Assembly (NCBI RefSeq): GCF_963853765.1
Contig: NC_088854.1
Coordinates: 12,648,001 to 12,712,000 of the forward strand
Length of the DNA stretch: 64,000 nucleotides
DNA from: Magallana gigas
Taxonomy: Eukaryota
Direction: 5' to 3'
Shown: piece by piece, positions 59,388 to 63,837 of the stretch
Position numbering within the stretch: the first letter of the stretch is position 1
How the letters are laid out: each line of letters begins with the position of its first letter
Made by a program: the position numbers and the translations under genes
Notes under the pieces: generated by a model
What the model was told of the DNA's origin: nothing
The model's database searches: none
What the model saw: the letters and a program-made list of their open reading frames with translations, nothing else

Positions 59388-59560
59388 AAAGTTAGCGACT
59401 AGTAACTGGCTACGAGAAGTAAGAAAACCTAGCTACTAGTAACTTGCTAAGAGATAAAATCAAAGTTGGCTACTCGTAACTGGCTACTAGTAACTGGCTT
59501 CGAGAAGTACGAAAAGCTAGCTACTAGTAACTGGCTACGAGATGAAAGAAACTTGGCTTC
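59388..59560. repeat. Short modular tandem repeats (core GCTACTAGTAACTGGC); left arm of putative Foldback-like element
   Basis: 5-6 degenerate copies; 59513-59551 matches the reverse complement of 63799-63837 at 36/39, with 23 bp perfect. Confidence 0.8.
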
Positions 59561-59639
59561 TAGTTACTTGTTACTGTCCATGTGAGAACACACACCTAGG
59601 ATTTCTATTTGTGTTCTTAAGATGTACATTGCACTATAT

Positions 59640-61600
59640 CACTGTCAATTGTCAATATATCTCAAGTAGCTGTATATATAAATTGAAGATATATGCCGGA
59701 CATGCTGATATCAACATTCTGTCAAGTCATCCACATAATATTACGACACAGTTACTCAGATATATTAAGATATCTTAATGTAGTCAGCTACTAGTGCATT
59801 TTGTTACAAATATCTTTATATTTTGGCGGTTTTGTCAATATATCTAAAGTAGCTGTATATATAAATTGATATATGCCAGACCTGCTAATATCAACATTCT
59901 GTCATGTCATCCACATAATATTACGACACAATTACTCAGATATCTCTCTTTATGAAGTCAGCTACTAGTACATTTTGTTACAAATATCTTTATTTTTTGG
60001 CGGTTTTGTCAATATATCTCAAGTAGCTGTATATAGATTGCTGATATTTACAAGTCATGTTCATTTTCATAATATATTAGGACATCCACATGATATTACG
60101 ACATACGAGGGTCAATAAAAAAATACGAAGACTTTTGTCATAGCTATGTTACTTAACGTCATATCATTACTAAATTTGGAAGACATAATTTAGCAATAGT
60201 TTCAAACAATTTGCAAGAAAAAAAGTTAATAAATTCCTTTATTTCTAAAAATTATTTACAATCAAATCCTGCAAAAATGAGGTCACGGCGCACGGTCAAC
60301 ATTTGTGTTATGTCAACAATAAACCATATAATGTTGAAAGTAATATCTCTATAAATTGGGCTTAAAACCAAATAATATTGAAACCTCACATTAAGTTTAG
60401 TCATGGAATTCCATGTTCCAAATAATGATGGGATATATTGTTTTGTTGAACAGATATTTGTAACTAAAGACAGGTAGTCCTCTTTGGAATTGACTAAAAA
60501 CATCGACGTCGGCGGACGTCACGGCGCAACGAGAAGTACAAAAAAAATGGATTTTATCAAGGAAAAAGCCGATACAAGTTGTAAAAATGCTCAATGGTGC
60601 AAAAAATAAGTCAACAATTATTTGCAAGTTTGTGTTTAACTGTAATAAATTTTATGGGGTTGGTGGTAATTGTATTTTGAATATAAAACAGTCCCCGAGA
60701 GAGTAGACTATCTGTAAATATTTGGTCAAAAAATAAGTAACGTCAACAGACGTTCAGGGTTATCCTTACTGTAAACTAATAGATACACGGTTAGAAAATG
60801 AAAACTTCGAAGAACTAACTTATGATTCTCGAACAAATGTGTGAAAATAAGATGTTAAGTGGTTCAGTGCCATTTTAAATTGTACGGAGAAAGGCAGAAG
60901 AGACTAAGCGTGATATAAAGATGGGGTATATCTATAAACTGTGCGTGTTTAATCTTGACGTCATGTTTTGAACGTTACCGTGCGCCGTGGTGACAAAACA
61001 TGTTGTTTTTAAAAAGGGGTAACAAAAATACCATTTCATCAAATGGACTTAAACTTCGCATATCAATGACATAAGTGTTGATGCACAGATTAATCTGTTA
61101 AGTATGACTTTCATGAAGAAAATATGATAGACAGCCACATTGGCTTCGTATTTTTTGATTGACCCTCGTAATTACTCATATACATGTATCTCTTTCAATC
61201 TCGTCGGCTACCAGTGCATTTTGTTATAAAAACTTCCATTTTTAACAGTTTAGTTGTTGATAAACCTCAAGTAACTGTGTAAAAAGAATGAAGATATCTA
61301 CTTGTGTGGTTTATTTAATGATATTATATTACATGATATTATGACCCAATTACTTAGATATCCCTTTAAATCTCGTCAGCTTCTAAAACATTTTGTTAAA
61401 AATATTTCTATTTTTTTTTTAGGATTTTGTCAACATTTTTCAAGTAGCTTTATGTATAGATTGCTCATATTAACCAGTCTTGCTTATTTCAACATTCTAT
61501 TAGGTCATCCACATGATATTACGGCACAACTACTCAGATATCACTCATAATCTCGTCAGCTACTAATGCATTTCGTTACAAATATCTTCATTTTTAACAC
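59640..61600. repeat. ~175-185 bp satellite-like array interrupted by a mariner insertion
   Basis: GTCAATATATCT(C/A)AAGTAGCTG at 59651, 59834 and 60008; units contain CATCCACAT(A/G)ATATTACG and GTCAGCTACTAGT; degenerate units resume at 61171-61600. Confidence 0.8.
60104..61170 (+). mobile_element. Non-autonomous mariner-type element (~1.07 kb), internally deleted
   Basis: TIR TACGAGGGTCAAT(A/C)AAAAAATACGAAG at 60104-60130 and 61144-61170 with TA at both ends. Removing it restores the satellite unit (ATATTACGACA-TA-ATTACTCA). Faint HTH-like residue QREV...KKPIQVVKML...FVFN at ~60530-60640. Confidence 0.85.
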
Positions 61601-61850
61601 TTTCCATGTTACTCGAGTTTCTGTACATTAAAGATATCTAGTTTATAAATTAAATATTGACGAACAAACAAAAAATTTAAAATCATAAAGATTGTAAAAA
61701 TCGTATCTGTAAGGGGATGTGGGTGGGGGGGGGGGGGGGCAAAGTTTACTTATAACTTCAATTTCACTGGTTATTTTCTTTCATTCACTTCATCTTTTTA
61801 TGTGCACACGAAAAGTATGGGGAGAAACGCTTAACGCCGGTAATTTTCAG

Positions 61851-63162
61851 GTGTTCCTACCAAAGATGTCCTAAATCAAATAAGAGCAGAAGAAAGACAG
61901 TACGAGAAAATAAGCGAATGTGGTATTCGAGAAATATATGCAGTAAAAAGAACATTAGAGATTATAGATATAGTCGCTAAACCAGTCAATGGCTATATTA
62001 AATTCATCGGTTTTGAACCATTTTTTGTGATAAATTTTTGCGCCGAACAAATAAACTTGTTTCGGGACGCTTGCAGACAAGATGATTGCTACTTGTACTT
62101 TGATGCAACAGGTTTATCTATGAAAAGACCGATGGATCAACCCAAACGACTTTACATGAATTGTCTTGTTCTCCAAACTAGGCGACACAGGGGAGGAATT
62201 CGAGTTGCAGAGATGCTGACAAATGACCATACAACTCCATCAATCACCAATTTTCTTTTGCGCATAAGACATGCAATTACCACAGGCAGTCTTTATCGAG
62301 CCCCAAGAAATATTGAGACTGATTTTAGCTTTGCCATGATTAATGCTGCATGCCGGGCTCTTAATTCTTGCAGTTTGGTTAATTATTTAATAGATTGTTG
62401 GAACAGCATAACTTCATCCATGTATATGTCATCAAGATGCACTGTTCTGCACATCTGCGCTGCGCACATGGTAAAAAAATCTTTCAAAATCTAATTGTTC
62501 AATCCACAAATATAAAGGATGTAAGAAAATTTTGGTTGTATGTATTGGCAAGACTGCAGACTTCAACTCCATTAGAGATTGCGTCACAATTAGTCGAAGA
62601 TCTTTCAACAATATCAAAGAGAAGGTCCTTCCGACATGACATTATCGAATTAGGACTGGAAAGGAGTAACCAAAATACAATCCAAAACCTTTTATTTGAT
62701 TGGGAACATGGAACATCGTCCCGTTGTCCGGTAAGATGCGGTGGCAATACAGAAACGATTCAACACTTTGAATCGATACCTGTATTATTATTTGTATCAG
62801 TTGACTTGGCGTCTGCTGTAGACAGACTGATAATCAGTTCCTTAGAAGATCCCATCAACGTTATTGACCAGCAGTACGATTTGTATGCAGCAACTCTGAA
62901 TAGATATGGCCACTTCTGTTTGTTGATGAGGTCTAAATCCGATGAGCCATGGTATTGTTATGATGGTCTTCGAAATAAAAACAGATTTGTAAAACTTGAA
63001 CGTTTTAGATGTAGATCAAATGAAACAGTTGTCCATTAATATATGTCAAAAGTTAGAGCAACTGAGAGAATCAGTTTTCAGGTTTTACCTAAAATGACAG
63101 GCATCGATAGAATTGATAGAAAAGAAATGGATTTTTATTTGATGACTTGGAAATTTCTGTAA
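61851..63162 (+). pseudogene. NOF-FB-like Mutator (MULE) transposase with USP-like C-terminal region; frameshifted and apparently internally deleted
   Basis: Acceptor TAATTTTCAG ending at 61850; open frame GVPTKDVLNQIRAEE...YLYFDATG (D at 62102)...VAEMLTNDH...IETDFSFAMINA (D at 62321)...LHICAAH (CxxH at 62456-62467). A -1 shift in the A7 run at 62473-62479 continues to YDLYAATLNRYGHF...WYCYDG. Stop at 63037-63039; frame continues to TAA at 63160-63162; AATAAA at ~63193. Confidence 0.75.
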
Positions 63163-63798
63163 TCAAGTTTTGATCAAATACGTTCATTTATAAATAAAAC
63201 AGAACTGACAACATGTAAATACATTTTTGTGACGTAGCAATATGTCTGTTCTTTTCTTTATTAGGCATATCAAATGATCTAGTTTATATAAGTTGGATAA
63301 ATAGATCACAAGCATAGATCTGTTTTGTTTATCTATTTTGGCTAGGAAGCTCTGATATGTTTGACCAAAGATTTTCGGTACACTGTCAACGTCAATCCAT
63401 TCTTTATTTGAATGCGTACGTTTTTTGAACTCGTTGTTTATTCATTGTAACTTAGTCTTTGGTTGGCTGGTTGTTTATTATGCTAGTCATTTTATTCATT
63501 TGTATGTGCATAATGATTAGTGCTAAGTCCTGTGTATCATAATACTTGCTTTCTCGTTATGAATTTTAGGTCTATTGGCTCTTTTTCTGGACTTCGTACA
63601 TTATATATGTAATAAACACCACATGATATCCTTATATGATAGAGGTGTATTTCATAGTAGGAACAGGAATTCAAGAAATAAACCAAGTTTTGTCTTTGAA
63701 ACGAAGTAACTTGAATAAACATCAAAACCCAATGTTGTAAAGTGACACATGTTTTTTTTAGAAAATGTTGTAAAGATATATATACAATACAGCTAACT

Positions 63799-63837
63799 TT
63801 TCTTTCATTTCCTTGCCAGTTACTAGTAGCTAGCTTT
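63799..63837 (-). repeat. Inverted copy of the left modular arm (right arm of putative Foldback-like element)
   Basis: GCCAGTTACTAGTAGCTAGCTTT (63815-63837) is the exact reverse complement of 59513-59535. Confidence 0.8.

What the first reader, a model, noticed from the sequence alone, without database searches (positions are those of the whole stretch)
59388..63837. Candidate Foldback/FB-NOF-like element in a mollusc: modular inverted arms around a NOF-type transposase
Seen: the left side has short tandem modules (GCTACTAGTAACTGGC) grading into ~180-bp units that share the GCTACTAGT core. The right side has an inverted module (36/39 match) 4.3 kb away. Between them is a spliced transposase with FDATG / TDFS / CxxH motifs. 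Known: Drosophila FB-NOF has long inverted arms of tandem modules around the NOF protein, a Mutator-superfamily transposase with this motif set. Inference: a bivalve FB-NOF-like family whose arm modules double as a satellite source. Arms are asymmetric here, and true termini and TSD (8-10 bp expected for MULEs) were not found.
Basis: partly seen in the sequence, partly recalled or inferred. Interest (0 to 1): 0.7.

Follow-up and report, generated by a model that had tools for sequence, protein, structure and literature searches.

The report
Broken oyster foldback transposon copy
The window holds an old, broken copy of a young foldback jumping-gene family of the Pacific oyster. Intact 22-25 kb copies elsewhere encode a transposase fused to a ubiquitin-protease-like domain, and the repeat arrays in their arms are the published "orphan" satellite CgiSat15.

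Summary
The repeats, the 36/39 inverted module and the FDATG/TDFS/CxxH motifs are real.

- **Extent:** the element runs from about 59380 to about 65567, so it leaves the window.
- **Arms:** each arm is a ~190-bp block of GCTACTAGTAACTGGC modules followed by 177-bp tandem units.
- **The "spliced" transposase** is a remnant. It is 5'-truncated, carries a +1 frameshift and has lost 1139 bp.

Elsewhere in the genome:
- **Intact copies:** two copies of 22.4 and 25.4 kb carry intronless ORFs of 1222 and 1162 aa.
- **Target site duplication:** ten of 11 end pairs show a 9-bp duplication.
- **Copy number:** at least 40 termini are 94-100% identical, out of 208 candidates. Most end pairs lie 3-14 kb apart.
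- **Satellite:** the 177-bp unit matches CgiSat15 of Crassostrea gigas at 175 of 177 positions. That satellite was published with no known link to a mobile element.

The protein has three parts: a WRKY-like N-terminal domain, a DDE/C(2)H RNase-H core, and a USP-like C-terminus.
- Its best solved structural match is an IS256-family transposase.
- No Pfam model covers the core.
- A MULE/Rehavkus-like placement is likely, about 0.7, but I could not compare it with NOF or Rehavkus sequences.
- Zisupton fails all three features tested.

The scan has noted other foldback families in this genome. I found no note on this one.

The parts
59380..59575 (+). Left terminal block. It holds a mutated terminus (AAAGAGT instead of the family's AGATAGG) followed by 37-nt and 14-nt modules carrying GCTACTAGTAACTGGC.
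   Evidence: It is 94% identical, in inverted orientation, to the block at window-equivalent 65368-65567 (L018 1368-1567).
59649..60102 (+). About 2.5 copies of the 177-bp subterminal repeat (CgiSat15), left arm, outer part.
   Evidence: TRF period 174, 89% matches. BLAST to the unit. Identity with CgiSat15.
60103..61170 (.). Nested, unrelated ~1.07-kb non-coding element inserted into a 177-bp unit. It has inverted ends (CGAGGGTCAAT...) flanked by TA on both sides.
   Evidence: Inverted repeat I5, 38 nt, 84%. The junctions read show the interrupted unit resuming after the insert.
61171..61610 (+). About 2.5 further, more diverged copies of the 177-bp repeat, left arm, inner part.
   Evidence: Families D3-D8. 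BLAST 73-81% to the unit.
61611..61822 (.). Filler between the arm and the gene remnant, including a G run. It has no counterpart in the intact copies.
   Evidence: Homology to the intact copy starts only at 61823.
61823..62621 (+). Transposase remnant 1, matching residues 428-694 of the 1222-aa ORF. It holds D(FDATG), D(ETDFS) and CAAH, and a +1 frameshift just after CAAHM (about 62471-62476).
   Evidence: 95.6% nucleotide identity to L016 3751-4548. Frame comparison.
62622..63039 (+). Transposase remnant 2, matching residues 1074-1222: the C-terminal half of the USP-like domain with the His box. It is joined to remnant 1 by a 1139-bp deletion at an AGAG microhomology.
   Evidence: The stretch 62618-63887 is 94.0% identical to L016 5688-6949. 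Junction read. Alignment A4.
63040..63790 (+). 3' non-coding part of the element, shared with the intact copies.
   Evidence: Part of the 62618-63887 match to L016.
63791..63845 (-). Internal, inverted copy of the terminus plus one module (ends ...CTTTACCTATCT).
   Evidence: The same feature lies inside both intact copies (L016 6852-6902, L017 1381-1427).
63846..64000 (-). Spacer leading into the real right arm, which lies outside the window. Inverted 177-bp units are at 64090-65292, the inverted terminal block at 65368-65567, and the element ends at about 65567.
   Evidence: L018 (the next 9 kb of the contig). Window 63937-64000 matches L016 6950-7006.

Best explanation
**What the window holds.** Window 59380 to about 65567 is a roughly 6.2-kb dead deletion derivative of a cut-and-paste foldback DNA transposon family of the Pacific oyster.

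**The intact element (shown).**
- It is 22-25 kb long.
- Both ends start 5'-AGATAGGTAAAGTTAGC.
- Each arm has a ~200-bp block of GCTACTAGTAACTGGC modules followed by 23 to more than 36 copies of the 177-bp repeat catalogued as satellite CgiSat15.
- It carries about 8 kb of non-coding DNA.
- It carries one intronless ORF of 1162-1222 aa.

**The protein.**
- An acidic N-terminus.
- A small beta-sheet domain with conserved Cys that looks WRKY/GCM1-like. This is the presumed DNA-binding domain.
- An RNase-H-fold DDE domain (D462, D535, E754; C580xxH583) with an alpha-helical insertion.
- A divergent USP-like cysteine-protease domain (Cys box near C917, His box near H1112).

**How it most likely works (inferred).**
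- The transposase binds the terminal modules and the related sites in every 177-bp unit.
- It pairs the ends and excises the element.
- It integrates at a 9-bp staggered cut. The 9-bp duplication is shown; the rest is inferred by analogy with MULE/hAT enzymes such as Muta1.
- Array length changes by unequal exchange.
- Internally deleted copies are moved in trans.

**Classification.** The family most likely belongs to the MULE supergroup near Rehavkus and Foldback (about 0.7).

**The window copy.** It lost the first 427 codons and another 1139 bp, gained a frameshift and a nested insertion, and has a mutated left end with no recognisable duplication. It is an immobile fossil.
For: - **Arms and extent:**
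- **Intact ORFs:** L016 2468..6136 and L017 2143..5631. The two full copies are 97-99% identical over their whole length.
- **Termini and 9-bp TSD:** 8 perfect and 2 one-mismatch cases among 11 +/- pairs.
- **Copy number:** at least 40 termini at 94-100% identity, 208 candidates.
- **Window copy defects:**
- **Conserved D, D, C..H, W, E across 42 relatives:**
- **AlphaFold core model:** pLDDT 90.
- **Best solved matches:** ISCth4 (IS256 family) at Foldseek E 2.3e-5 and Z 13.0 (rmsd 5.3, 245 aligned). P element follows at Z 11.6 and Hermes at Z 11.4.
- **N-terminal domain model:** pLDDT 91.5. The top Foldseek hit is a WRKY domain (prob 0.98, E 0.056), with many further WRKY hits and AFT2 at Z 4-4.7.
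- **Language-model neighbours:** MULE clusters for the core; GCM, FLYWCH, FAR1 and DBD_Tnp_Mut for the N-terminal domain.
- **Paralogues and distant relatives carry Pfam UCH and Ulp1:**
- **USP-like boxes in this protein:**
- **Unit equals CgiSat15:**
- **Transcription:** strand-specific polyA RNA reads lie across the ORF, with no splice joints.
- **Role of subterminal repeats in Muta1:** PMC5499845.
Against: - Pfam MULE (PF10551) matches neither this protein, nor any of 42 relatives, nor these loci in a whole-genome scan.
- The structural lead of IS256 over the P element and Hermes is only about 1.5 Z units.
- The WRKY-like matches are weak (Z under 5).
- The His that is nearly invariant in the family's N-terminal domain is not evident in this protein.
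- No NOF, Rehavkus or canonical MULE sequence could be compared directly.
- Pfam UCH does not reach significance on this protein itself.
- Under the usual dUTP convention the RNA reads would be antisense to the ORF, and the library chemistry is unknown.
- The window copy has no TSD.
Confidence: 0.85

Rival explanations
1. The family is a separate, un-named lineage within the hAT / MULE / P / Kolobok group of C(2)H DDE transposases, or sits closer to P or hAT. It would then have acquired foldback arms and a 9-bp duplication independently.
For: - No Pfam model of any superfamily matches the core in 42 members.
- P element (Z 11.6) and Hermes (Z 11.4) are close behind ISCth4 (Z 13.0).
- Foldback architecture is known to arise in more than one superfamily, for example Galileo in P (cited in PMC4079207).
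Against: - The best hit in both aligners is the IS256-family enzyme.
- The N-terminal domain resembles WRKY/FLYWCH/FAR1-type fingers rather than THAP or BED.
- hAT and P elements typically make 8-bp duplications (my own knowledge).
- The nearest language-model clusters are MULE.
Confidence: 0.2
2. It is a Zisupton (KDZ superfamily) element. Fish proteins are among its relatives and some relatives carry a Ulp1 protease domain.
For: Fish, sea-cucumber and mussel relatives, and Ulp1 domains in relatives.
Against: - Zisupton makes 8-bp duplications (PMC12730594). This family makes 9 bp.
- Animal Zisuptons are multi-exonic and carry Pfam KDZ PF18758 (PMC9297572).
- This ORF is intronless, and PF18758 matches none of 42 members and none of these loci.
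Confidence: 0.05
3. One reading: the window copy itself carries a functional spliced transposase gene between two short asymmetric arms.
For: A GT...AG pair flanks a 47-nt stretch at the frame change.
Against: - The intact copies read straight through this stretch.
- The window copy lacks codons 1-427 and 695-1073, including the catalytic E and the protease Cys box.
- RNA reads on an intact copy show no joints.
Confidence: 0.02

Closest known systems
Rehavkus (MuDR-related group in Repbase; e.g. Rehavkus-1_TC of Tribolium castaneum)
   Same: - 9-bp TSD.
- Long inverted termini carrying subterminal tandem repeats that are also catalogued as satellites. The 164-bp TCsat23 sits in the arms of the 9.5-kb Rehavkus-1_TC.
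- A single ORF.
- A PHD finger, which appears in relatives of this protein.

Sources: PMC6446971, PMC10218199, bioRxiv 10.1101/2024.12.02.626372 (25, 48, 55).
   Different: - Reported only from arthropods and annelids.
- This element's own protein shows no PHD finger.
- It carries a USP-like domain that those papers do not mention.
- It is 22-25 kb long.
- Sequence relatedness could not be tested.
Drosophila FB / FB-NOF
   Same: - Long inverted arms of tandem repeats.
- A 9-bp duplication (my own knowledge for FB).
- Most copies lack a gene, and a few carry a large ORF.
- Foldback elements are mostly assigned to the Mutator superfamily (PMC4079207).
   Different: - No NOF sequence was available, so homology is untested.
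- The autonomy of FB-NOF is itself disputed (Badal et al. 2013, cited).
- Here two intact ORFs sit inside complete elements with perfect TSDs.
Tetris (Drosophila virilis foldback element that seeded a satellite)
   Same: - Arms consist of a terminal domain plus about 220-bp tandem repeats.
- Those repeats share a motif with the terminal domain and also exist as a satellite.
- 8-10-bp TSD (PMC4079207).
   Different: No transposase is known for Tetris. Here the autonomous copy is present.
Muta1 (Aedes aegypti MULE, a 'type 2 foldback' element)
   Same: - Subterminal tandem repeats in the TIRs.
- DDE plus C/D(2)H plus W.
- Experimental evidence that more subterminal repeats strengthen transposase binding and cleavage (PMC5499845).
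   Different: - Muta1 is small and has short repeats.
- Its transposase matches canonical MULE models.
- It has no protease domain.
Zisupton / KDZ transposons
   Same: Large animal transposases. Some of the relatives found here have a Ulp1-type protease domain.
   Different: 8-bp TSD, multi-exon genes and the PF18758 domain. None of these holds here.
CgiSat15 (Crassostrea gigas satellitome, PMC8268682)
   Same: - The 177-bp arm unit consensus is a circular permutation of the published monomer.
- 175 of 177 positions agree, by eye.
- AT content is 68.4% here against 68.9% published.
   Different: It was published as a satellite with no Repbase match and no stated link to a mobile element. Here it is the subterminal repeat of a transposon.

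Membership tests
Foldback-type DNA transposon (structural class) | Long terminal inverted repeats built from tandem subterminal repeats | tested here: met
   Arms of 4.6-5 kb in the C2 copy: a terminal block plus 25 and 27 units of 177 bp in opposite orientation. The window copy has about 5 and 7 units.
Foldback-type DNA transposon (structural class) | Target site duplication at the outer ends of independent copies | tested here: met
   A 9-bp TSD in 10 of 11 +/- pairs, 8 of them perfect. None is recognisable for the window copy.
FB-NOF (NOF-type transposase) | Sequence homology of the ORF to the Drosophila NOF protein | not testable with these tools
   No NOF sequence could be reached. The protein searches returned no named NOF hit.
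MULE (Mutator-like) superfamily | TSD of about 9 bp (8-11) | tested here: met
   9 bp.
MULE (Mutator-like) superfamily | RNase-H-fold DDE domain with a C/D(2)H motif after the second D and a conserved W | tested here: met
   D462, D535, C580xxH583, W729 and E754 are conserved in 42 relatives. The fold is confirmed. hAT, P and Kolobok share this feature, so it does not discriminate on its own.
MULE (Mutator-like) superfamily | Match to the Pfam MULE domain PF10551 | tested here: not met
   No hit for the protein or for 42 relatives. A genome scan with PF10551 found 81 places, none at these loci.
MULE (Mutator-like) superfamily | Closest prokaryotic and structural relative is the IS256 family | tested here: met
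   ISCth4 ranks first in Foldseek (E 2.3e-5) and in VIA-align (Z 13.0). The margin over P (11.6) and Hermes (11.4) is small.
MULE (Mutator-like) superfamily | N-terminal WRKY-GCM1-type zinc-finger DNA-binding domain (FLYWCH, FAR1, DBD_Tnp_Mut) | tested here: inconclusive
   WRKY domains head the Foldseek list (prob 0.98, but E 0.056). Z is 4.0-4.7 for WRKYs and AFT2. Language-model neighbours are GCM, FLYWCH, FAR1 and DBD_Tnp_Mut at 0.77-0.86. The three Cys are conserved; the family's His is not evident here.
Rehavkus | 9-bp TSD and long TIRs with subterminal tandem repeats or minisatellite | tested here: met
   Definition from PMC6446971 and bioRxiv 10.1101/2024.12.02.626372.
Rehavkus | PHD finger in the transposase | tested here: inconclusive
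   None in this element's protein. Present in relatives: P0016, 3 of 42 members, and a weak hit in paralogue L024.
Rehavkus | Sequence homology to Repbase Rehavkus transposases | not testable with these tools
   Repbase is not available here.
Zisupton / KDZ | 8-bp TSD | tested here: not met
   9 bp, against 8 bp in PMC12730594.
Zisupton / KDZ | KDZ transposase domain PF18758 | tested here: not met
   No hit in 42 members. A genome scan found 2 weak places elsewhere.
Zisupton / KDZ | Multi-exon transposase gene | tested here: not met
   Uninterrupted ORFs of 3.5-3.7 kb. No joints in RNA reads.
USP/UCH (peptidase C19) domain | Match to Pfam UCH, with Cys box and His box | tested here: inconclusive
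   Pfam UCH is significant in paralogues and distant relatives (E 1e-18 to 1e-33) but not in this protein. This protein keeps an NTC Cys box at 915-917, a shortened His box HGHF at 1110-1113 and WYCYDG at 1125-1130.
CgiSat15 satellite DNA | Monomer length and sequence | tested here: met
   A 177-bp consensus of 49 units was compared by eye with the published monomer. It is a circular permutation with 2 differences.

The most novel reading that the evidence does not exclude
This transposase belongs to a very large metazoan lineage with no model in Pfam. The profile search found 5835 clusters at 50% identity. The lineage combines a WRKY-like finger, a DDE/C(2)H core and one or two de-ubiquitinase or de-SUMOylase domains (USP, Ulp1). 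It may be the poorly known Rehavkus branch, sister to canonical MULEs.

On this reading the protease domains would serve the element, for example by removing ubiquitin or SUMO marks used in chromatin silencing or repair. In the Pacific oyster the lineage would still be active, would be the sole source of satellite CgiSat15, and would have reshaped chromosomes, possibly including a 6.3-Mb inversion on C7.
Probability: 0.3. Interest if true: 0.65.

Novelty: new member of a known kind. Interest (0 to 1): 0.5.

Why it matters
- **Autonomous foldback elements are scarce.** Tetris has no known transposase and the autonomy of FB-NOF is disputed. Two intact, near-identical 22-25-kb copies with perfect duplications, plus roughly a hundred short derivatives, make a workable system. 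It could be used to study how subterminal arrays are bound, how they grow, and how they become satellites.
- **It gives an origin for a published orphan satellite.** CgiSat15 has about 1800 monomers on all ten chromosomes.
- **It adds to the picture of oyster satellites.** Most of them appear to reside in mobile elements.
- **It exposes an annotation gap.** A large animal transposase family with fused USP and Ulp1 domains is invisible to current Pfam models, so its genes are likely to be annotated as host proteins.

The window copy itself is an ordinary dead fragment.

Tried and rejected
**Searches that gave nothing useful**
- Pfam and NCBIfam scans of the two ORF pieces, of the full protein and of 42 relatives gave no transposase family.
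- Sequence search of PDB chains gave nothing, with the protein or with the profile.
- The word-based homologue search found only 5-8 proteins and no named transposase.
- Two cluster look-ups gave only 'uncharacterized' or 'hypothetical' names.

**Models tested and rejected**
- The intron model is refuted by the intact copies.
- Zisupton fails on TSD length, Pfam domain and gene structure.
- A second gene in the 8-kb internal region of the full copy: there is no ORF of 130 aa or more.
- Extra conservation of the shared motif within the 177-bp unit: conservation is flat at about 94%.

**Steps that could not be completed**
- The predicted partner junction of a possible C7 inversion (TGTACACCA plus terminus) was not found.
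- I could not build a MULE reference alignment from this genome.
- Yuan & Wessler 2011 is not held in the library.
- The supplements of the five-oyster satellitome paper are not held.

**How the two ORF pieces were handled.** The two window ORF pieces were searched separately by reference. I met no runs of N.

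
Full report
**1. Observation.**

- GCTACTAGTAACTGGC (up to 2 mismatches) occurs five times on the + strand between 59395 and 59535 and once on the - strand at 63815-63830. It occurs nowhere else in the window. Chance expectation is 0.01.
- The left copies form 37-nt and 14-nt tandem modules.
- They are followed by units of 174-183 bp at 59649-60103 and again at 61170-61610.
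- Those two stretches were one array. It was split by a 1.07-kb nested element with 38-nt inverted ends, flanked by TA.
- The inverted module is 36/39 identical.
- FDATG, ETDFS and CAAH are in the translation.

I searched the two reading-frame pieces separately, by reference, and never joined them.

**2. True extent of the window copy.**

The next 9 kb of the contig (L018) contains the missing arm.
- Seven inverted 177-bp units lie at window-equivalent 64090-65292.
- An inverted terminal block lies at 65368-65567. It is 94% identical to the left block.

The element therefore runs from about 59380 to about 65567, or 6.2 kb.
- The arms are 87% alike over their outer 732 bp.
- The module at 63791-63845 is an internal copy of the terminus (it ends CTTTACCTATCT). 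It is found at the same place inside the intact copies.
- The 'asymmetric arms' came from the window edge.

**3. The gene is a remnant, not a spliced gene.**

A six-frame search of the genome found two uninterrupted ORFs.
- One is 1222 aa, on C2 (L016 2468..6136).
- The other is 1162 aa, on C7 (L017 2143..5631, - strand).

Against these, the window copy differs as follows.
- It starts at codon 428.
- It has one extra base just after CAAHM. The intact copies read CAAHMLKIFQNL straight through the supposed intron.
- It lacks 1139 bp (codons 695-1073), joined at an AGAG microhomology.

It has therefore lost the catalytic E and the protease Cys box. Nucleotide identity to the intact copy is 94-95.6%.

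**4. The family.**

The C2 copy spans C2:22012717-22035121 (22.4 kb). In order it contains:
- the terminus AGATAGGTAAAGTTAGC;
- a ~200-bp module block;
- 25 units of 177 bp;
- 8.1 kb without an ORF of 130 aa or more;
- the ORF;
- the internal terminus copy;
- 27 inverted units;
- the inverted block.

The C7 copy (50277858-50303270, 25.4 kb) is 97-99% identical to the C2 copy throughout.

A genome search with the terminal 219 bp gave 208 candidates. Forty were scored, at 94-100% identity.
- Eleven +/- pairs could be formed. Their ends lie 3.2 to 25 kb apart.
- Ten pairs carry a 9-bp target site duplication, eight of them perfect. Examples are AACTAATGA, TTTTAATAA, GGCAACAAA, AAGGTGCTC and AATAAACAC.

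Together with near-identical ends and two intact ORFs, it indicates recent mobility.

The window copy is different.
- Its left end is mutated (AAAGAGT where the family has AGATAGG).
- Its flanks do not match (AAAATGTGT against TTCCATTTA).
- It is therefore old, rearranged, or both.

**5. The arm repeat is a published satellite.**

I built a consensus of 49 units from the C2 copy. It is 177 bp long, 68.4% AT, and the units agree at a mean of 94%.
- Read by eye, it is a circular permutation of CgiSat15 from the Crassostrea gigas satellitome, with two differences (supplement of PMC8268682).
- CgiSat15 is listed as a 177-bp monomer, 68.9% AT, 0.08% of the genome, with about 1770-1900 monomers on all ten chromosomes and no Repbase match.
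- No other paper in the library mentions it.
- All the places I could inspect from a genome search with three units lie inside elements of this family (one search compared). I could not check every array.
- Each unit carries AGCTACTTGT and its reverse complement. These are one mismatch from the core of the terminal modules.

**6. The protein.**

No Pfam or NCBIfam model matches the core, either in this protein or in 42 relatives.

A profile search of 1.84 billion representative proteins found 5835 relatives at E up to 1e-3, and 879 at E up to 1e-30.
- The named ones come from fish, a sea cucumber, a mussel and a beetle. All are annotated as uncharacterised.
- Paralogous families in this genome (25-27% identity) and distant relatives carry Pfam UCH and Ulp1 domains. 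Some also carry an N-terminal PHD finger.
- Conserved positions, in the numbering of the 1162-aa protein, are C269, C294, C299, D462 (FDATG), D535 (ETDFS), C580xxH583, W729 (PLWSG) and E754.

Structure prediction and fold search:
- The AlphaFold model of residues 240-800 has pLDDT 90.
- Its best solved match is the IS256-family transposase ISCth4: Foldseek E 2.3e-5, Z 13.0, rmsd 5.3 over 245 residues.
- The P element transposase follows at Z 11.6 and Hermes at Z 11.4.
- Among viral models, one bracovirus protein matches over its whole length (E 8.7e-11).
- The N-terminal 145 residues, modelled alone, reach pLDDT 91.5.
- That domain gives WRKY domains as the top Foldseek hits. The scores are weak (E 0.056; Z 4.0-4.7, including AFT2).

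Language-model neighbours:
- For the N-terminal domain: GCM, FLYWCH, FAR1 and DBD_Tnp_Mut clusters, at 0.77-0.86.
- For the core: MULE clusters, at 0.91.

The C-terminus keeps an NTC Cys box, a shortened HGHF His box and WYCYDG. These align with the UCH domains of the paralogues.

**7. Classification.**

Evidence pointing to the MULE supergroup, and within it to the Rehavkus/Foldback kind:
- the 9-bp duplication;
- foldback arms with subterminal arrays;
- the C(2)H motif;
- the IS256-like best structural match;
- the WRKY-like N-terminal domain.

Rehavkus has a 9-bp TSD, long TIRs with subterminal tandem repeats that double as satellites in Tribolium, and a PHD finger (PMC6446971, PMC10218199, bioRxiv 10.1101/2024.12.02.626372).

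That IS256 is the prokaryotic relative of MULEs, and that WRKY-GCM1 fingers are their usual DNA-binding domain, rests on my own knowledge of the literature.

Each line is indirect, and the Pfam MULE test failed. I put MULE/Rehavkus-like at about 0.7. 'NOF-type' remains untested.

Zisupton fails on all three features tested:
- it makes an 8-bp TSD;
- it has multi-exon genes;
- it carries PF18758.

**8. Mechanism.**

Shown:
- the architecture of the element;
- the 9-bp duplications;
- intact ORFs together with many gene-less derivatives;
- transcription of one strand.

On transcription: two polyA stranded RNA runs, sampled at about 1 in 100, give 54 and 31 reads.
- Across the ORF, all first mates lie on the - strand of L017.
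- There are no splice joints between 1250 and 7000.
- Under the common dUTP convention this RNA would be antisense to the ORF. The chemistry is unknown, so the sense is open.

Inferred:
- The N-terminal finger binds the terminal modules and the related sites in each unit.
- More units mean stronger binding and cleavage, as measured for Muta1 (PMC5499845).
- Excision goes through flanking-DNA hairpins, as in MULE and hAT.
- Integration happens at a 9-bp stagger.
- Unequal exchange changes array length.
- Abortive gap repair creates deletion derivatives such as the window copy, whose deletion junction shows microhomology.

The role of the USP-like domain is unknown. My guess is that it interferes with ubiquitin- or SUMO-dependent silencing or repair.

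**9. Verdict.**

- The window copy is a dead fragment.
- The right arm and the 'splicing' were misread.
- The family is a new member of a known kind. Its added value is an autonomous copy, a link to CgiSat15, and a large protease-fused transposase lineage that has no Pfam model.

The scan's notebook lists other foldback families in this genome that carry other CgiSat satellites, mostly without a transposase. I found no note on this family.

Noticed in passing
G000:C7:5694460 (- end) and C7:12011520 (- end); also C7:11997265 (+ end): Two right-hand ends of the family lie 6.3 Mb apart and have reverse-complementary 9-bp flanks (GGGGTTCCC / GGGAACCCC). That pattern is expected if one insertion was split by an inversion with a breakpoint inside the element. 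The 14.3-kb pair 11997265/12011520 has non-matching flanks. The predicted partner junction was not found, so this could also be a more complex rearrangement or a misassembly. I could not check whether it is this locus.
   Followed up: partly
window 60103-61170: A ~1.07-kb non-coding element with 38-nt imperfect inverted ends (CGAGGGTCAAT...) and TA on both sides is inserted into one 177-bp unit of the left arm. It is probably a Tc1/mariner-type or similar non-autonomous element.
   Followed up: partly
window 58076-58995: A different tandem repeat of about 161 bp (2-5 copies, 63-88% alike) lies directly left of the element. It is unrelated to the 177-bp unit.
   Followed up: no
L023 3886-8022 (G000:C1:40369885-40374021) and L024 2039-7636 (G000:C3:23744038-23749635, - strand): Paralogous transposase families in the same genome have open frames of 1379 and 1866 aa and are 25-27% identical to this one. 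They carry Pfam UCH and Ulp1 domains, and one also has BAG and PHD-like domains. Their termini were not examined.
   Followed up: partly
G000:C6:18873938-18895017: A third element of about 21 kb in this family has a TSD with one mismatch, but its ORF is broken into pieces of 344 and at least 382 aa.
   Followed up: partly
L017 1471-5184: One oyster RNA-library assembly holds a 3690-nt contig of this ORF with 24 substitutions and three indels of +1, -1 and -24 nt. At least one further, damaged copy is therefore represented in RNA libraries, or as DNA carry-over.
   Followed up: no
BFVD entry O92526 (Chelonus inanitus bracovirus): An uncharacterised bracovirus protein of 544 aa matches the predicted transposase core over its full length (Foldseek E 8.7e-11). 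It may be a transposase of this or a related lineage carried in a polydnavirus genome.
   Followed up: no
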